A stretch of DNA of 64,000 bases from Gracilinanus agilis (taxonomy: Eukaryota): the NCBI RefSeq assembly GCF_016433145.1, contig NC_058135.1, positions 274,053,009 to 274,117,008 of the forward strand, in the 5' to 3' direction. The translations under genes and the position numbers were made by a program. Positions 2,709 to 45,060 of the stretch are shown piece by piece. Positions within the stretch are counted from its first letter, which is position 1. Each line of letters begins with the position of its first letter. Below the pieces are notes generated by a model. It saw only the letters and a program-made list of their open reading frames with translations, ran no database searches and was not told the DNA's origin.

Positions 2709-3638
2709 TCATTTCTCATTTGAAGACATACTTTTTTCCCAGAGTTTCCTCATGGCATTTTTCACCTCTGCATTTCTCAGTGTATAGATCAGGGGATGTA
2801 ACATGGGGGCTACCAGAGTATAAAATACTGTCACAGCTTTATCTATGGGTAGAATTACCACAGGCCTCAAGTACACAAATATACAAGGCACAAAAAATAG
2901 GATAACAACAGTGATGTGAGACACACAAGTCGAGAGGGCTTTGCGTCTGCTTTCCCGACTGTGAGTTTTCAAAGAATTAAAGATGACAGCATAGGAAGCC
3001 ATCAATAGGAGAAAGTTTAAAAGACAGATGAGGCCACTATTTGCTGCAACAAAGAGGCCAAGATTATGGGTGTCCATGCAGACAAGTTTGAGTAAAGGGT
3101 TCAAATCACACATGAAGTGATCTATGACATTGGGCCCACAGAATGGCAACCAGACTGTGAAGAGAAGCTGTATTATTGCATGGAGAAAGCCTCCAGCCCA
3201 TGCTACCCCCACAAGGAGACCACAGAGCCTCTGGCTCATGATTGTAGTATAGTGCAGAGGCTTGCAGATGGCTACATAACGGTCATAGGCCATGACTGTT
3301 AGCAAGATGATCTCAGCACCACCAAAGAAATGTTCTGCAAAGAGTTGAGTCATACATCCATTAAAAGATATGATTTTCTTTTCATATAATGAGTCAACTA
3401 TCAGTTTGGGGGCCATGGAAGAAGAACAAAGACCATCTATTATGGACAGGAAAGACAGAAAGAAGTACATGGGAGAGTTCAGAGCTTGGCTGGTTGTGAC
3501 AGTAACAATAATAAGCAAGTTACCCACCAAAGTTACCAAGTAAATTAGTAAGAACACCACAAATATAATTTTCTGCATCTCTGGATTCTGTGTGAGGCCC
3601 AGGAGAATGAATTCAGTCACATTGTTTCCATTCTCCAT
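2709..3638 (-). CDS. olfactory receptor, family 4 subfamily C (intact 309 aa; NPxxY altered to HPLIY)
   Basis: Intact ORF with OR motifs [52 protein letters not shown]. Confidence 0.96.
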
Positions 3639-9619: not shown

Positions 9620-11721
9620 TTATTCCTGTTGACTCCTTAGGAGCATAGGGCCGCAACCATCTCATGCCAGCGGACTCTGTTCTGGGCAACTTCCCCCAGC
9701 TGAGCCCATGTCATTCCGACTGTTTTTGTTTCATTTTCGGCAGATCTTCGCCAGGTCTGTTTTGGTCTTCCGACTTTCCTCCTCCCTGGTGGATTCCAGC
9801 TCAGTGCTTGTCTGCCTACGTTGTCTTCCAGTTTTCGTAGCATATGTCCTATCCATCTCCACTTATATTTCTTTATGTCCTGACTAATGGGATACTGGAT
9901 TGTTCTTTCCCAAAGACCAGCATTGGAGATCTTTTCAGGCCATCTGATGTTCAAGATGTAGTGTAGACATCTGTTAACAAAGACCTGGAGTTTATTGGTG
10001 TTAGCGCTCCTCACTCTCCAGCTTTCTGATCCATATAGAAGGACGGCCTTTACATTGGTATTGAAGATTCGGAGCTTAGTGAGGAGGGACAGTGCTTTGG
10101 AGATCCAGACAGACCATAAGGTGTTAAATGCCTGTCTGGCTTTGTTGATTTGGTTTCTGATGTCCTCATCTGCTCTGCCATCCTTACTGACTATGCTACC
10201 CAAATAGGTGAAGTGGTCCGTCTCCTTGATGTTTTCTCCCTGTAGTTGGATTGGCAGGTCCTGTCTGCTGTTGACTGTGATCACCTGGTCTTCTTCTTGT
10301 TGATCTTCAGACCTGTCTTCTCTGCTTCTTCAGAGAGTCGTGCAAGTTTGGCTTGCGCATCCTGCTGCTTGTGAGAAAGGAGACAGATGTCATCTGCGAA
10401 GTCAAGGTCCTCAAGCTGTTTGGTATGAGTCCATTGAATGCCCGTATTGTTGTCCTTGGTAATTCTTCTCATGGTCCAATCTATGACCATCAAGAAGATA
10501 AGGGGCGAAAGCATGCAGCCTTGCTTCACTCTGGTCTTCACTGTGAAGGGAGCCGTCAGTTTCCCATTGTGGATGACCTGGCAGGTAAAGTCTTCGTATA
10601 ACCGCTGGATGATGTTGATGAGCTTCGGGGGAATCCCGTAATGCTGCATCAATCTCCAGATGATGTTCCTGTCCACGCTGTCAAATGCCTTCTCGAAATC
10701 CACGAAAGCCATGTAGAGGGGGGACTGCCATTCGATGGACTGTTCGATGATGATTCTTAGGGTGACGATATGGTCGGTGCACGATCTGTGCTGACGAAAC
10801 CCTGCTTTTTCTATTCTCAGTTTCCTGTCCAAGGCCTCCTTCAGTCTTTCTATGATTACTCTGGTCAGGATTTTGCTGGGAGCGGATAGAAGCATGATTC
10901 CTCGCCAGTTGCTGCATTGGGATAGGTCACCTTTCTTGGGTAGCTTCACTAGGTAGCCTAGTTTCCAGTCTGTCAGGACTTGTTCCTGTTCCCAGATCTT
11001 CTGTAGGAGGGGTTGTAGCATCTCCGCTGACATTTCTGGGTCTGCCTTGAGTGCCTCAGGGGGGATGCTGTCTGGACCTGCAGCCTTACCATTTTTCATG
11101 GTCTTGATGGCTTTGATGATCTCAACTTTGGTAGGTGGGCCCATGTTCACCTGAAGCAGTTCGGTGGCTGGTGGTATGTCCGGAACAGTTGGTGGAGGCG
11201 GTCAGTTCAGGATTTCTTCGAAATGTTCTGCCCATCGGGCTCTCTGCCCTGCATTGCTTGTTATTGTCTTGCCAGTCTTGTCCTTCACTGGCTTGCTAGG
11301 GTTGTAATTCTTTCCCAATAGAGTTCTTGTTATTTCGTATAGCCTCTTCATGTTCCCCTGCCCAGCTGCTATTTCTGCTTCTTCGGTCATATCGTGAATC
11401 AACCGTCTCTTGTCATATCTTGTGCTCTTCTTGACTTGATGGTTAATTTCCCAGTACTGTGTTCAAAGTTCTTCTTTCTCCTGTTGATCTTGGCATTAGC
11501 TGATCTTCTGTTTCAAATCTCTTCTCTGTTGTATCTTGCCCCATGTCTCTTGTGTTAACCATTCCTTGCGCTTTCTCTCTCTCTTTCTCAGGACTTCTGC
11601 GCAGGTGGTCTTCCAGGTCTGCTGGAGTTTGGTCCAGTGGTTTTCAACTGTTTCTCCCGTGAGTCCTGTCAAGGCCACGAACCTGTTCTTGATTTCGCAA
11701 TCGAATGCTTCTTTTTCCTCT
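9620..11721 (-). mobile_element. 5'-truncated RTE-clade LINE (SR3-like), relatively young
   Basis: RT motifs GFRQHRSCTD, YMAFVDFEKAFDS, VKQGCMLSP, LDFADD; RTE C-terminal LLYGSESW and KWRWIGH; very short 3'UTR; possible degenerate TSD ctagcag (9545-9551)/ctggtag (11722-11728); visibly GC/CpG-richer than flanks. Confidence 0.93.
9637..11720 (-). pseudogene. disrupted RTE reverse transcriptase ORF
   Basis: ORF pieces 11496..11678, 11202..11402 and 10281..11150 share one frame, broken by TAA 11496-11498, TGA 11463-11465 and TGA 11202-11204; a ~1-nt frameshift near 10287 leads into 9637..10284. Confidence 0.9.
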
Positions 11722-12498: not shown

Positions 12499-12513
12499 AA
12501 AACTGTAGCTATT

Positions 12514-12567
12514 GGGCAGCTGGGTGGCTCAGTGGATTGAGAACCAGGCCTAGAGATGGGAGGTCCT
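12514..12567 (+). mobile_element. tRNA-derived marsupial SINE head (A box only), 5' part of a chimeric retrocopy
   Basis: gggcagctgggtggctcagtggattgagaaccaggcctagagatgggaggtcct closely matches the first 54 nt of the full SINE at 44852-45060 and stops just before the B box. Confidence 0.9.
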
Positions 12568-13238
12568 TTTCTTAAAGTGTTCATTCCATCGCTGTTCATC
12601 TCTCATGTTTTGGCTTTGGGACTAGGCATCTATATTGGAAAACGACTGAGCTCCCCGTCGGCTAGCACCTACTGAGGGAGAGGAGAGCCCTGGACGTGCG
12701 CGTGCCCTGTGAAGTGCTGTCCCTGTCACGTTAGTGTATTTGAACTTGAGACCATTCTAAGCATGCCCCAGCCCAAGATCTCTTTTTACCTAGCCACGTT
12801 CCAGCTCCTCTTGGGACTCAGTATTTTATTCGAACTCTTGGGAGGCATTTTCATGACCTCATGCCCTTTTTGGCCTGTAGACCCTCAGAGTTTCCTCACA
12901 GAGTTTACCAATGTCTAGAAATTTTCGGAGTCTTCTTTTCGACGCAGATGCCAACAGCAAGTGATTTTTCCGCAGCCTTCTTTGTCTCCTTCTTTTCCAT
13001 CCCAACTGAGTTAGAGCTTCAGCCTTCCCATAGAAATGCTGCCTGCTCTAGGACAGCAGTCATCACTCTTTTAAAAAAGAAGGCAGGCTAGCAAGTATCC
13101 TATCAAACTCTGATTTTTCAAGATAAAGACAAGCTCTCCATAAGCTCACAATTTATAGTTATAAAAAAAAAAAAGAAAAAGATACATGAGAAAAAGTAGT
13201 CTGTGGCAATAAAAAATATCTCAAACCAAAAAAAAAAA
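12568..13238 (+). pseudogene. BNIP3L: 5'-truncated processed pseudogene of BNIP3L/NIX (C-terminal TM coding region + 3'UTR + polyA)
   Basis: 12568-12675 translates [35 protein letters not shown], matching the recalled BNIP3L C-terminus; AATAAA 13208-13213; A-tail 13228-13238; 15-bp TSD aaaactgtagctatt at 12499-12513 and 13235-13249. Confidence 0.93.
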
Positions 13239-14519
13239 CTGTAGCTATTACTTTTATTCTTAGGTAGATTGTAATATTCAAAATAATACCAATGAAAAGG
13301 AAGAAAAAACATTGAACTCTGCAATTTATGAAGGCACTAGTAAATTTTAGCATCTATTAAGTAATTAGTCTGTCTATACTATTTCAGATTAAATAGGTAT
13401 GGGAGACAATGGTGGAATAAAAGAAACTGTTGCAATGGTCTAAGAATGGGAATTTTATTGATAGAATGAAATTCTTAGCTCTGATTGTCAGGGATCAGAA
13501 CTCTTAATTTAGACTATACCTATATGTGTATGCATGTGTATATGTGCATGGGTCTATATATACCATATATTGTGATATAAAATATACACATGCCCAAACA
13601 TATATTTTAATGCACATATAATATATACATGCATAATAATATAAATGCATATACATATTTGCACATATATGACTATGTTTGATTTTTTCAAAGTAGAAAG
13701 TCTACTAGGAAGCCTGATCAGATAAGAAAATAGTATTGAAAATATGATGAGTAATTTTCCTTGTGTGGTGGCTATTTATAACAGTTTGGGAATTTGAGTG
13801 TTGTGTCCTTGGTCTTGATACATAACTGCTTAGTGGTATTAAGAGGTCTCCTCTGTGGCCTCGAACTGTTTTCCTATTACAACCACAGAGAGGAGGAGGG
13901 TTCATTTATACAATATCAGCAATTGAATGTAAATTAGAAGTAAACTTTCCCAAATTTTCATAACAGCTAATATTACTAAGGCAATGAGGGCCTCTATGGA
14001 GATTGGTCTTTCCATATGCAAAATTTACCTTTTTTTTAAGGAATGGTGATTAAATGGGAGGAAGAGAGAGAAAGAAGAGAATTCCTACCCTTTATAAAGC
14101 ACTGCCCTAAAATCTAAGCATGCATATTTAAAAGAAAAGATAGTCTACCTCAAGGAAATTATATTCTATTGGAGGAAACCACACACAAAGAGAACAGTGC
14201 AATAAAAGGCACTTTATTCTTCAAAGTAACAAGGATAGTCAGTGGAATCCTAGAGTAGTAAGCTTATAGGTACCATCAAGGAACAGTGATAGAACTTACT
14301 TGATCAAGGTTCCAGAACTGCAGAGTGGGGGTTGATAAGAAGGTTGAGAGGAATGATAGGACATAACAAGGAAATTGAGCCCACATATAAAGTTGTGAAG
14401 CATCCAAATACTTGGTAATCAAAAATTGTATAAATAATCATTAAAGAAATAATTATTTTATTCCCCTTAGATGGCCCAGAGGATACAATGTTGTGCCTTG
14501 AGTCAGGAATTCCTATCTT

Positions 14520-14843: not shown

Positions 14844-15773
14844 TTATTTGTTACTCCAGGCAAATCTTTGACTCCATAACTTCCTCATGGCACTTTTTAC
14901 CTCTGCATTTCTCAGAGTGTAGATCAATGGGTTTAACATGGGGGTTATCATGGTGTAAAATACAGCCATAGCTTTGTCAATGGGAAAGGTAGTCATGGGA
15001 CGAAGATAGACAAAAATACAGGGAATGAAGAATAAGACAACCACAGTAATGTGGGACAGACATGTAGAGAGGGCTTTTTGCCTCCCTTCTGAACCATGTG
15101 TTTTCAGGGAGTAAAAGATGACAATGTAGGAGGAAATTAGCATGGTGAATATTAGCACACACATTACCCCACTGTTTGCAGCAATAAAGAGAGCAAAGGG
15201 GTGAGTATCAATACAGGCGAGTTTCAGCAATGGGAAAAAATCACAAATAAAATGGTCCATAACATTGGGACCACAGAAGGGCAACCAAAATACCGACACG
15301 ATCTGTATTGTGGCATGAAGAAAGCCCCCCAGCCATGCCAGCCCCACCAGTATACCACACAAATGTTGGTTCATGATGGTCATATAGTGCAGAGGTTTGC
15401 AGATGGCCACATAGCGGTCATAGGCCATCACCGTGAGCAGGATGATCTCAGCGCCACCAAAGAAATGTTCTGCAAAGAGCTGAGTCATGCACCCATTGAA
15501 AGAGATGGATTTTCTCACCGAGAGTGAGTCAATTATCATTTTGGGGGCCATAGTGGATGAACAGCAGCCATCTATGAAGGACAAATAGGACAGGAAATAG
15601 TACATGGGTGAGCCTAGAGCCTTGCTTGTGGTGATAGTGATGATAATTAGCAAGTTGCCTGCCAGTGTTGCCAAGTAGATGAGCAAAAACACCACAAATA
15701 TAATTTTCTGCATCTTTAGATTCTCTGTGAGTCCCAGGAGAATGAATTCAGTCACATTATTAATTCCCTCCAT
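14844..15773 (-). CDS. olfactory receptor, family 4 subfamily C (intact 309 aa)
   Basis: Intact ORF with [36 protein letters not shown]. Confidence 0.96.
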
Positions 15774-20909: not shown

Positions 20910-23409
20910 ACCTTGTTATCCATTTATCATTAACATTTATCTAATCAACCCTAATATATGTCTATCAACTCAAGCCCAGAACAATCAGACAGAGAAGCTG
21001 TGTGACTCTATTCATAGTTTCTCACTGGATTATTTAGTTCTGAGCACTGTAGGTGGAAACTGGTGTTTGGCTGAGATGCAATCAGTTTGGAAACTAGTGT
21101 TCACTTTCTCAAAGTTGGTATTCATTTAGGCTTCCCATCCTTTTTCAGCTTAGGTCCTTAAACCATCTGAGGACCTTGGGTCATCTCTTTATCAGAACCA
21201 ATCCAGAAGCACCATACCGCCCATAACAGGTACTTCAACTTTCTTAAAAACAACACACATTAATAAATGTTAAAAAAAAATTAATAAATGTTAAAAAAAA
21301 CACACAGACATCAATAAAACGTCACTAGCAAGGCATTATTCCAAAGTGATAAGAAGCTGACCTCGAAATAAGGAAAAACTGACTTTAATCCTTCTGTAGA
21401 TTGGGAATGAGACCATGACAAGTGATTTTACCTCTTAGCTTTCCATATAACTCTCTAAATCTACAAGTGGAAGAACAGATTGTGAGATTCTTCTCTAAGT
21501 GTACCTTATACCATTGGAATCACTGAAGATCCAAACTAATAATTAAAAATTATTAAAATATACAATTATATCTATATATCAATGCCTACACCTATACTTA
21601 ACTATTAAAAGCATAATAATAAGTTAATCATGAGGATGAAATGATATGATATTTATAAAGCATATTATGGATTGAAAACCCATTATATATGTAAGATGCA
21701 AATTTTTAAAAATTTATTCTTGAAAATAAATGTTGAAATATACCTTCAAGACTCTGAGATTTTAGTAGAGATATAGGACTTTATGATCAAGGGACTGAGA
21801 GACAAGTGAAGATGACTTACTCATAGAAATATTCATTTAGTGCTATAAAGAAATTTAGAGGGCATTTAATGTTTCCTCATTTTATAAATGAGGTAGTTCC
21901 AGTCACAAAAAGGAAAATTACTTATCAAATATATCACAATAGTAAATGTTATAATCTGATGATTTTTGAAACCTGGACTCTCCAGCTCCAAATTCAATAA
22001 CATTCTCACTGTGCCAGTATCCATTTTCATCATTTTTTAATTTAAAAAAAGATTAAGAGATTTAGGTGATTCTCTAAAGGTTACACACTAATAGGTGTGC
22101 TAAACTCAACTGAAGATTAACTACCATCAATAGCAGTAACCAAAGTTTCTTACAGTAAAGAATGGCTTTCCATCTTTAATAGTTTTTAAATGAAAGAGAT
22201 GAAGATTTAAAAAATAATATCCTGATCACCATATTTTCTAGTAAGGTCATGAGTGTTTATCATTACTTGACAAATATCAGAGAGGATTAAGGGTTAAACT
22301 TGGAATCAGAAGACACAGGTTCAAATTCACTTCAGACACTGATTAAATGTGGGACTCTTGAAAAACACCCAAGACTTAGTTTCATTATCTGTAGAGTGGG
22401 GATAATAATATTTATTCCACTCATTTGACAAGATTATTATGAAGAATTTTCTTTATAAATATCTAAAAATAAGAATTTCCTACTATTATGAGATACTTTA
22501 ATACTATGGAGATTGCAGTGGACTGGTCATAGGGTATTCACTGACAGATTATAGATATTCTAGTATTTATGCCCTGTTACTGCATGCTATGAATCATAGG
22601 TGGTTGTGCTGTTTTAAAGATGGAAATAATATTTTTTTGTTTAAATCAGGATGTATGCAGCTATGGCCACAGATGCTATCACAAAATTTTAATGTAGTAA
22701 ATGAATAAAAATTGAATGCCTTATAAGAAGTTAAACATATTAAATCCATGTCTCTATGAGAATACTACAGATTTAAGTGACAGTTATGAAGTATGAGATG
22801 ATTTTATACACAAAGAAGCAATCCTATAATGGGTGAAATCTACCCAATATTACCATACTAATTAATATTGGAGATAAAATTTCAATCTAGGCCTTCAGGA
22901 TTCAGTTCCCCACTCTCCTTGTAACTCTTATATTTTAGGGCATCTACTCTTTGGAGGTAGACTTTTCCAGGACTTATTGAAAAAAATCACTGACAGGATC
23001 TAAATTCAAAAGTCACAAGTCAAAGATCAAACATAACATAAATGCTCAGAAAAAAAAAAAAAGGATCATCATTTTAAGAGAAGAGGAAGAAATGAATCAG
23101 GACTACAAGTACAGTGAAAAATTACCTGGATAAGACAGTTCTACTTGAGGCAAATTTCTTTCCAGAACTAATTTTTCAAAATTGCTATGTCAAGACTTGA
23201 GGATTTGTTTTTGTTCCCAATACACAATTTCTTTCCTCTTTCATTCTGGTTTGTCACCAGAAACAGAATTGAGTTCAATGTTAAGTGATGTCATTAGTGA
23301 GGCTCCTTCCCTCTGACATTAGCTCCTAAAATGTGCTTCTGAAACCTTTCAGAATTGTCTTCTGAACTATTCTCACTCTGAAGGCAAAGAAAGCTTTCTT
23401 TTATGCTGG

Positions 23410-29072: not shown

Positions 29073-29249
29073 GGGGCAGCTGGGTAGCTCAGTGGAGTGA
29101 GAGTCAGGCCTAGAGACAGGAGGTCCTAGGTTCAAACCCGGCCTCAGCCACTTCCCAGCTGTGTGACCCTGGGCAAGTCACTTGACCCCCATTGCCTACC
29201 CTTACCAATCTTCCATCTATGAGACAATACACCGAAGTACAAGGGTTAA
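29073..29249 (+). mobile_element. young opossum-type tRNA/CORE SINE
   Basis: Intact A and B boxes, CpGs retained, 17-bp TSD aaaaatgaataagtgaa (29056-29072 / 29250-29266). Confidence 0.95.
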
Positions 29250-29846
29250 AAAAATGAATAAGTGAAAAGATTTTATTTATGTGAAAAAAGAAAAGCCCAA
29301 TTTTTACTCTGGTAGAAGACTGGACTAGATGATGTCTAGAATTCCTACTACCTCTCAGATTCTGTGCTTTTGGATTCTGAAAAAAAACCTCACTTTTCAG
29401 CACCAAGGACAGGGCATGAAGAAAAAGAAACTGAAAAAGAGTTCCCAAAGGGAAATGATAATCCAAACTGCTTATATTTTATCTGCATCACTCACTTATA
29501 TTATTATTTCCTCTGTTTGATAAAGAATCTGTATCTATTTGACATCAGTCTTTTCTAATAAAGAAATTTGGTGCCAGAAATTGTTGGATATGAAATTTAA
29601 TTAGGCACAAATTCATGTAATAGTTGTTCTGCCTCCAGTCTATCCTTGAAATGACTCATTTTATAAAGTTAACTCATAAGATTTCTGAGGATTCATATCC
29701 TAACTACTAGTCAGAGTGATAAAAAATAAACAAATCATGTCCCATTTGTCCCTTCAGATCTCTAATGAGTAGCTATAGGGAACAGTATTTGAGCTTTCTT
29801 AAAATGTAGTGCTCATCTTATTTCCCATACAACACTTCATAGAAAA

Positions 29847-44851: not shown

Positions 44852-45060
44852 GGGGCAGCTGGGTGGCTCAGTGGATTGAGAGCCAGGCCCAGAGATGGGG
44901 TGTCCTGGGTTCAAATTTGGCCTTGGATGCTTCCCAGCTGTGTGACCCTGGGCAAGTTACTTAAGCTCCATTGCCCAGCCCTCACTGCTCTTCTACCTTG
45001 GAACCAATATTCAGTATTAATTCTAAGGTGGAAGATAAGGATTTAAAAAAAAAAGGAAAA
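44852..45060 (+). mobile_element. opossum-type CORE SINE (intermediate age)
   Basis: Full head with A and B boxes, core, A-tail; TSD aagaataatgg(a)cttt 44836-44850 / 45061-45076. Confidence 0.9.

What the first reader, a model, noticed from the sequence alone, without database searches (positions are those of the whole stretch)
12499..13249. Single-event chimeric retrocopy: marsupial SINE head fused to the BNIP3L (NIX) mRNA 3' end
Seen: one perfect 15-bp TSD (aaaactgtagctatt, 12499-12513 and 13235-13249) encloses a 54-nt SINE 5' end joined directly to 35 intact codons of the BNIP3L TM C-terminus, the stop codon, ~550 nt of 3'UTR, AATAAA and a poly(A). The SINE breaks just before its B box. 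Many CpGs survive, so the insertion looks fairly young. Established: L1 template switching produces U6/5S/7SL-mRNA chimeras in eutherians. Inference: L1 RT switched from BNIP3L mRNA to a SINE RNA during TPRT. A SINE-mRNA chimera in a marsupial may be undescribed; it may be one of a family, and it retains an A box only.
Basis: partly seen in the sequence, partly recalled or inferred. Interest (0 to 1): 0.75.

Follow-up and report, generated by a model that had tools for sequence, protein, structure and literature searches.

The report
SINE head joined to BNIP3L retrocopy
A small opossum's genome holds a dead, intron-less copy of the tail end of the mitophagy gene BNIP3L, joined to the first 54 bases of a common jumping element; it is a neat but ordinary by-product of LINE-1 activity, and one event or two cannot be told apart from this locus.

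Summary
A perfect 15-bp direct repeat (12499-12513 and 13235-13249) sits on a TTTT/AAAA LINE-1 nick site. It encloses 54 nt of an L1-dependent tRNA-type SINE head and 35 BNIP3L codons. Then come the stop codon, 552 nt of 3'UTR, AATAAA and a short A-tail.

New here: the BNIP3L part is spliced. It holds the last 59 nt of exon 5 joined to exon 6, and the ~1.75 kb intron seen in dasyurid loci is absent. The break lies mid-exon with no splice signals, so splicing did not make the junction. No microhomology is visible at the junction.

The 'single event' reading is not proven. A second route gives the same picture: an ordinary SINE insertion makes the repeat, and a later BNIP3L retrocopy primes on the SINE's A-tail and deletes SINE nt 55 to its end. 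Rough rates from primate data put the two routes at similar odds (0.45 versus 0.40).

The didelphid assemblies gave no DNA.

Chimeric retrocopies are a known class. The scan has noted other chimeric retrocopies in this genome, but not this one. No function is shown.

The parts
12499..12513 (+). 5' copy of the 15-bp target-site duplication AAAACTGTAGCTATT. It is preceded by CATTTT, so the bottom-strand nick site is TTTT/AAAA.
12514..12567 (+). First 54 nt of an L1-dependent tRNA-type CORE-SINE (SINE1_Mdo-like). It contains the A box TGGCTCAGTGG and ends at ...GGTCCT just before the B box. It starts one G short of the GGGG start of other copies.
12568..12626 (+). Last 59 nt of BNIP3L exon 5. In dasyurid locus L007 this is 21108-21166 of exon 5 (21017-21166), so the break is at nt 92 of a 150-nt exon.
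12627..13227 (+). BNIP3L exon 6: the last codons, stop TGA at 12673-12675, and 552 nt of 3'UTR up to a proximal poly(A) site. About 81-83% identical to dasyurid exon 6.
12556..12675 (+). 39-codon ORF. An ATG inside the SINE head is in frame with the 35 BNIP3L codons (MGGP plus the transmembrane tail). No sign of expression was obtained.
13208..13213 (+). AATAAA poly(A) signal, 14 nt before the end of the mRNA-derived sequence. It is conserved in the dasyurid genes, where the transcript contig L010 reads through it.
13228..13234 (+). Short A-tail of 7 A, running into the AAAA of the 3' repeat copy.
13235..13249 (+). 3' copy of the 15-bp target-site duplication.

Best explanation
Shown: LINE-1 machinery reverse-transcribed a spliced BNIP3L mRNA that was polyadenylated at the proximal site, priming at a TTTT/AAAA nick. 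The copy reaches back only to nt 92 of exon 5. There it is joined, in the same orientation and with no overlap, to nt 1-54 of an L1-dependent SINE. One 15-bp repeat flanks the whole.

Inferred, and favoured only narrowly: both parts entered in one event as a chimeric cDNA. One way is that ORF2p reached a broken 5' end of the BNIP3L RNA and jumped onto a 3'-truncated SINE RNA, copying it to its 5' end. The other way is that the two RNA fragments were ligated before reverse transcription. Within the single-event reading I put these at roughly 60:40.

The product is a dead-on-arrival pseudogene fragment with no demonstrated function.
For: - The perfect 15-bp repeat flanks both parts exactly and lies on an L1 endonuclease consensus.
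- There is no A-tail and no second repeat between the parts.
- The SINE part begins at the SINE RNA's own 5' end, within 1 nt. That is expected if reverse transcriptase ran to the end of a pol III transcript.
- The BNIP3L part is processed: the ~1755-nt intron 5 of the dasyurid loci is absent.
- The junction is mid-exon and has no GT/AG, so splicing did not make it.
- The junction is blunt, with 0 nt of microhomology, which fits end-to-end template jumping or ligation.
- SINE1-type elements are L1-mobilised and recently active in didelphids (PMC2910653; PMC4408412).
- U6-L1 chimeras exist in opossum (PMC4476161).
- Bipartite chimeras that include mRNAs and transposable elements are an established class (PMC2104539).
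- 3'-truncated small RNAs joined to other cellular RNAs are described (PMC6789731).
Against: - The repeat does not discriminate. A full-length SINE inserted earlier would carry the same repeat (see the first rival).
- In the human catalogue of 113 Alu/L1 chimeras, most Alu parts are full length, whereas here the SINE is cut at nt 54. That needs a SINE RNA fragment or an internal landing.
- Arrival of both parts at the same time was not tested. The orthologous loci and the reads were unreachable.
- The A-tail is only 7 nt long.
Confidence: 0.45

Rival explanations
1. Two events. First, a normal full-length SINE insertion created the 15-bp repeat. Later, L1 nicked the T-tract opposite that SINE's A-tail (TTTT/AA at the body/tail border) and reverse-transcribed a BNIP3L mRNA from there. 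The 5' end of the cDNA was then joined upstream at SINE nt 54, deleting SINE nt 55 to its end (~135 bp). That is an insertion-mediated target-site deletion and makes no new repeat. The same orientation of the two parts follows automatically.
For: - It predicts exactly the observed order: repeat, SINE 1-54, BNIP3L, A-run, repeat.
- It explains without extra assumptions why the SINE is cut at an arbitrary internal point and lacks its tail.
- Full-length SINEs with A-tails and 11-17-bp repeats are common in this window.
- L1 and Alu insertion-mediated deletions are documented: 50 L1 events and 33 Alu events in human and chimpanzee, against 1,835 L1 and 5,530 Alu human-specific insertions (PMC3543922).
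- My rough product is: landing in a SINE tail, a few per cent, times deletion, about 1-2%, times an endpoint inside the SINE. That gives about 1e-4 to 3e-4 per retrocopy. It is the same order as, or above, the rate of truncated-SINE chimeras implied by the human catalogue. This estimate is inference.
Against: - There is no microhomology at the 5' junction, although 5'-truncated L1-type insertions joined by end-joining often show some (my knowledge).
- The combined old and new A-tail would be only 7 nt.
- No intermediate SINE-only allele has been seen, but none could be looked for.
Confidence: 0.4
2. Retrocopy of a pre-existing chimeric transcript. That could be a cis- or trans-spliced SINE-BNIP3L RNA, or a daughter copy of an older master chimera transcribed from the SINE head.
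For: - Law and Burns propose trans-splicing for some mRNA/L1 chimeras.
- The dasyurid parent sequence has a pyrimidine tract followed by CAG two bases upstream of the break.
Against: - The break is 2 nt past that CAG and in the middle of exon 5.
- The SINE side continues with GG or AG, not GT.
- The head lacks a B box.
- The junction itself is TTTT, a pol III stop, so a pol III transcript from the head could not include the BNIP3L part. AATAAA-dependent polyadenylation is a pol II feature (my knowledge).
- No second copy is known. The genome could not be searched.
Confidence: 0.07
3. Simple nested insertions without deletion: either a SINE inserted into a BNIP3L retrocopy, or a BNIP3L retrocopy inserted into a SINE with its own repeat.
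For: Nested insertions are the commonest way two retroposons come to lie side by side.
Against: - The SINE fragment has no A-tail and no repeat of its own.
- No SINE remainder follows the A-run. The sequence after 13249 is unique flank.
- The repeat is non-SINE sequence lying outside both parts.
Confidence: 0.02

Closest known systems
Bipartite chimeric retrogenes made by L1 (Buzdin/Gogvadze type; U6/L1, U3/L1, 5S/L1, Alu/L1 and mRNA-containing chimeras)
   Same: - Two unrelated transcripts are fused head-to-tail in the same orientation.
- There is one poly(A) at the 3' end and one 10-20-bp repeat around both parts, at an L1 endonuclease site.
- The 3' part is 5'-truncated.
- The 5' part starts at its own 5' end.
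(PMC2104539)
   Different: - The 5' partner here is a marsupial tRNA-type SINE cut at nt 54, not a full-length snRNA or Alu.
- The 3' partner is a cellular mRNA, not L1.
- Because the 5' partner is itself a retroposon with its own repeat and A-tail, a two-step origin cannot be excluded. For U6 or 5S partners it can.
RtcB-ligated U6/L1 chimeric RNAs (Moldovan et al. 2019, PMC6789731)
   Same: It offers a route to a chimeric RNA before reverse transcription. The paper notes that 3'-truncated small RNAs joined to other cellular RNAs could arise by endonuclease cleavage plus ligation.
   Different: Nothing here shows a 2',3'-cyclic phosphate end or any chimeric RNA. The BNIP3L side is cut after a purine (GAA|UUU), which does not fit a pyrimidine-specific RNase. 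That last point rests on my knowledge.
L1/Alu insertion-mediated deletions (Han et al. 2005 and Callinan et al. 2005, as summarised in PMC3543922)
   Same: A retroposed cDNA replaces target DNA and leaves no repeat of its own. This would explain the loss of SINE nt 55 to its end.
   Different: The ancestral allele needed to show a deletion is not available. Here the deleted DNA would lie wholly inside an older SINE, so the older repeat mimics a single-event signature.
Ordinary 5'-truncated processed pseudogene of BNIP3L
   Same: Intron loss, use of an AATAAA poly(A) site, an A-tail, a target-site duplication and 5' truncation.
   Different: It carries 54 nt of foreign SINE sequence at its 5' end.

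Membership tests
L1-mediated processed pseudogene (retrocopy) | Introns of the parent gene are absent | tested here: met
   Window 12568-12626 matches the end of exon 5 and 12626/7-13227 matches exon 6 in three dasyurid BNIP3L loci. The ~1755-nt intron (L007 21167-22921) is missing.
L1-mediated processed pseudogene (retrocopy) | Ends at an mRNA poly(A) site with an A-tail | tested here: met
   AATAAA at 13208-13213, mRNA-derived sequence ending at 13227, then A7. The same signal is conserved in the dasyurid genes.
L1-mediated processed pseudogene (retrocopy) | Target-site duplication of about 7-20 bp at a TTTT/AA-type nick site | tested here: met
   Perfect 15-bp repeat, with bottom-strand TTTT/AAAA. 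Under the two-event rival this repeat belongs to the SINE, not to the retrocopy.
Single-event bipartite chimeric retrogene | Two unrelated transcripts fused directly, in the same orientation, with no A-tail between them and one repeat around both | tested here: met
Single-event bipartite chimeric retrogene | Both parts arrived at the locus at the same time (presence or absence at orthologous sites) | not testable with these tools
The didelphid assemblies returned no DNA.
Single-event bipartite chimeric retrogene | Insertion into a pre-existing element is excluded | tested here: inconclusive
   Simple nesting is excluded. Insertion into the A-tail of an older SINE with deletion of its body is not excluded.
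L1-dependent tRNA-type CORE-SINE (SINE1_Mdo-like) | Homology to the SINE from its 5' end, with an A box | tested here: met
   The 54 nt are 87-93% identical to three full-length copies in the window, and the A box TGGCTCAGTGG is present. The name SINE1_Mdo rests on published descriptions and my memory of the consensus, not on a library match.
L1-dependent tRNA-type CORE-SINE (SINE1_Mdo-like) | B box, CORE domain and own A-tail, that is, a complete and potentially mobile unit | tested here: not met
   The fragment stops before the GGTTCAAA box and has no CORE domain or tail. It is a fragment, not a SINE copy in its own right.
BNIP3 family (Pfam PF06553) | Score above the curated cut-off | tested here: met
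   43.8 bits against a cut-off of 26, covering profile positions 151-183 of 184, which is the C-terminal transmembrane part only. 35/35 identical to didelphid BNIP3L.
L1 insertion-mediated deletion | Target DNA present in the ancestral allele is missing at the insertion | not testable with these tools
   No ancestral or orthologous allele could be obtained.

The most novel reading that the evidence does not exclude
The 54-nt SINE head would be a discrete, processed 5' fragment of SINE RNA, cut at the start of the T-arm like a tRNA fragment. In the didelphid germline it would be recurrently joined, by ligation or by ORF2p template jumping, to broken mRNAs. The genome would then hold a dispersed set of 'SINE 1-54 plus mRNA 3' end' chimeras, each with its own repeat. 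This would be a SINE counterpart of U6/L1 chimeras and a possible first step towards new SINE families. A side possibility is that the 39-codon ORF (ATG from the SINE plus the BNIP3L transmembrane dimerisation tail) is expressed as a micro-protein.
Probability: 0.08. Interest if true: 0.6.

Novelty: new member of a known kind. Interest (0 to 1): 0.3.

Why it matters
If it was one event, it extends L1-made chimeric retrocopies to a marsupial SINE as the 5' partner. It would also show that fragments of SINE RNA can be captured, which bears on how new composite retroposons arise.

The more general point concerns method. When the 5' partner of a supposed chimera is itself a retroposon, an enclosing target-site duplication is not proof of a single event. 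Only the timing of arrival at orthologous loci can prove that.

For the host, the locus is most likely a neutral pseudogene fragment in an olfactory-receptor cluster.

Tried and rejected
**Reads.** The look-up of sequencing runs listed 20 runs. The word shares (0.56, 0.32, 0.22, 0.16) therefore stay uninterpreted. A local script that scanned the window file for SINE heads printed a line running into 12601-12614. Nothing from it was sent to a search.

**Parent gene of this genome.** P0068, P0170 and the neighbouring OR protein were located in GCA_016433145.1 or GCA_027887165.1, but no DNA was served because the files are too large. So I have no nucleotide divergence, no age and no orthologous site.

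**Didelphid transcripts.** I looked for them through a 76-codon ORF in the 3'UTR. The exact look-up was blank and the word search was blank. A search with residues 1-140 of P0068, a part not encoded in the window, gave no didelphid transcript contig. L011 is from an unnamed marsupial and only 86% identical, so it is uninformative.

**Folding.** Folds of the SINE head and of the full heads were no better than shuffles (z -0.5, -1.2 and +0.3). There is no structural clue to the nt-54 break. ARAGORN finds no tRNA there.

**Readings rejected.**
- Splicing: the break is mid-exon, there is no GT on the SINE side, and the CAG lies 2 nt away.
- Twin priming: the two parts have the same orientation.
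- Simple nesting: there is no SINE tail, no SINE remainder and no inner repeat.
- A pol III-driven new SINE family: there is no B box, and TTTT stands at the junction.

**Paper not held.** Buzdin et al. 2003 (NAR) could not be fetched. What I say about it comes through PMC2104539 and memory.

**CpG comparison.** The comparison with other marsupial UTRs shows that several CpGs are private to the retrocopy lineage and still intact. Without the parent sequence this does not give a date.

Full report
**1. What is there**

A perfect 15-bp direct repeat, AAAACTGTAGCTATT, stands at 12499-12513 and 13235-13249. At local base composition the chance of that 15-mer recurring at a set position is about 3.5e-9. 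The whole 64-kb window holds only two 15-mer direct pairs 300-2000 bp apart.

The upstream flank reads CATTTT|AAAACTG. The bottom strand is therefore TTTT/AAAA, the LINE-1 endonuclease consensus (the consensus is established knowledge).

Between the repeats lie, in order:
- 54 nt of a SINE 5' end (12514-12567)
- 35 codons and a stop codon (12568-12675)
- 552 nt of non-coding sequence
- AATAAA (13208-13213)
- seven A's (13228-13234)

**2. The SINE part**

The same head occurs at the start of three full-length SINE copies in the window, at about 44853(+), 29074(+) and 63176(-). Each copy has a CORE-like body, an A-tail and an 11-17-bp repeat of its own, which is the mark of L1 mobilisation.

The alignment shows the chimera matching them from GGGCAGC, one G short of their GGGG start, through ...GGAGGTCCT. 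It then departs exactly where they continue with (G/A)GGTTCAAA, the B box. The A box TGGCTCAGTGG is kept.

The head is 93% identical to the 44853 copy and 87-89% to the other two. Those two are 97% identical to each other and represent a younger subfamily.

Published work describes SINE1_Mdo and SINE1a_Mdo as tRNA-headed CORE-SINEs. They are specific to the opossum lineage, L1-mobilised and recently active (PMC2910653; PMC4408412; PMC4476161). I could not match the head to a repeat library, so the family name is an attribution from those descriptions.

**3. The BNIP3L part**

The 35 codons hit Pfam BNIP3 at 43.8 bits against a cut-off of 26. They are identical in all 35 residues to the C-terminus of BNIP3L isoform X2 (P0068).

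P0068 is encoded in assembly GCA_016433145.1. The olfactory-receptor gene at 14847-15773(-) of this window is found in that same assembly and nowhere else. The window therefore comes from that genome, and the retrocopy's reading frame is identical to that genome's own BNIP3L protein. From memory this assembly is the agile gracile opossum.

- Window 12568-12626 matches the last 59 nt of exon 5 (97% identity).
- Window 12626/7-13227 matches exon 6 (81-83% identity).

The 1,755-nt intron between those exons in L007 is absent from the window. The copy was therefore made from spliced mRNA.

It ends 14 nt after an AATAAA that is conserved in the dasyurid genes. The devil transcript reads through that site, so the template was a proximal-site isoform.

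**4. The junction**

In L007, exon 5 runs 21017-21166 and the copy starts at 21108, which is nt 92 of 150. The dasyurid parent reads ...TTTTCTCTGCAGAA|TTTCTTAAAG.

In this genome the protein has Ser-Ala-Glu-Phe at that point. The base before TTT must therefore be A or G, not the T found at 12567, so that T belongs to the SINE (...GGTCCT). The SINE's next base is G or A, while BNIP3L's first base is T. There is no microhomology on either side.

A pyrimidine tract followed by CAG lies 2 nt upstream of the break in the parent. The break is not at that CAG, and the SINE side has no GT. Cis- or trans-splicing did not make this junction.

Both parts have the same orientation, which excludes twin priming.

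No A-tail or repeat separates the parts, and no SINE remainder follows 13249. This excludes plain nesting in either order.

**5. One event or two**

It is not proof, because the 5' partner is itself a retroposon.

A normal full-length SINE insertion would have produced this very repeat and left an A-tail abutting its 3' copy. The T-tract opposite such a tail is a good L1 priming site. A BNIP3L mRNA reverse-transcribed from there would sit in the SINE's orientation. If its 5' end were joined upstream at SINE nt 54, with loss of the ~135 bp between, the result would be indistinguishable from what is seen.

Insertion-mediated deletions are documented: 50 for L1 and 33 for Alu in human and chimpanzee, against 1,835 L1 and 5,530 Alu human-specific insertions (PMC3543922).

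Single-event SINE chimeras are also documented. There are 113 Alu/L1 chimeras in the human genome, but most carry full-length Alu (Law and Burns). That work separates sequential from contemporaneous arrival only by multi-species alignment.

My order-of-magnitude products put both routes near 1e-4 per retrocopy. This is inference from primate numbers.

The blunt junction and the very short total A-run lean slightly towards one event. The arbitrary internal SINE breakpoint leans slightly towards two. I therefore give 0.45 to a single chimeric cDNA and 0.40 to the two-step route.

**6. If it was one event**

Template jumping by ORF2p and RNA ligation before reverse transcription both remain open. 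RNA ligation is shown for U6/L1, and its authors suggest it for 3'-truncated small RNAs joined to other RNAs (PMC6789731). Both routes need two broken RNAs.

Folding gave no clue to why the SINE would end at nt 54.

**7. Age and function**

The BNIP3L part keeps 14 CpG (o/e 0.46) in flanks with o/e 0.04-0.21. Its 35 codons are intact. Several CpGs not shared with other marsupial UTRs are still present. 'Fairly young' is reasonable but unquantified.

An ATG in the SINE head is in frame, giving a 39-codon ORF that encodes the transmembrane tail. There is no evidence of transcription.

The head has no B box, and the junction is TTTT, a pol III stop (my knowledge). The unit is therefore unlikely to propagate.

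**8. What could not be done**

The exon-junction result rests, which came earlier. It went to no search.

Attempts to reach didelphid BNIP3L transcripts through UTR ORFs or the N-terminal part of P0068 were blank.

- Intron loss: confirmed.

**9. Comparison and verdict**

This is a real and cleanly preserved structure. It belongs to known kinds: a processed pseudogene that is either a bipartite chimeric retrocopy or an insertion-with-deletion into a SINE.

Other chimeric retrocopies have been noted by this scan in the same genome (s1-190010 and others; I did not check them). None has this structure.

A marsupial SINE-mRNA chimera may not have been described specifically, but it would be an expected member of the class. 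Interest is modest.

Noticed in passing
window 29074-29255 (+) and 63176-62990 (-): Two full-length SINE copies are 97% identical to each other, each with its own repeat and A-tail. They look like a young, recently active subfamily, distinct from the subfamily of the chimera's head and of the copy at 44853 (about 80% identity between the subfamilies).
   Followed up: partly
window 9637-11150 (-): Two adjoining long ORFs (215 and 289 codons) lie 1.3 kb upstream of the insertion, in the stretch that another first-stage note (s1-196756) calls a CpG-rich RTE LINE. RTE elements do not make poly(A)-primed insertions with 15-bp repeats, so this element is not the likely mobiliser of the BNIP3L copy.
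   Followed up: no
window 2709-3638 (-) and 14844-15773 (-): Two intact 309-codon olfactory-receptor ORFs (7tm_4) flank the insertion, which sits 1.6 kb beyond the stop codon of the second. The second protein placed the window in assembly GCA_016433145.1.
   Followed up: partly
L007 21090-21107 (dasyurid BNIP3L exon 5): Just upstream of the retrocopy's breakpoint the parent exon reads TTTTCTCTGCAG, a pyrimidine tract plus CAG that looks like a cryptic 3' splice site and also contains CUGCAG. The break is 2 nt past it, so I see no link, but it may be worth a look if other BNIP3L retrocopies break here.
   Followed up: no
window 12564-12571: The fusion creates TCCTTTTC, a run of four T exactly at the junction. 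For a pol III transcript starting at the SINE head this would act as a terminator after about 57 nt.
   Followed up: no
L010 1280-1487 versus window 13200-13234: The devil BNIP3L transcript contig reads through the AATAAA at which the opossum retrocopy ends. Marsupial BNIP3L therefore has at least a proximal and a distal poly(A) site.
   Followed up: no
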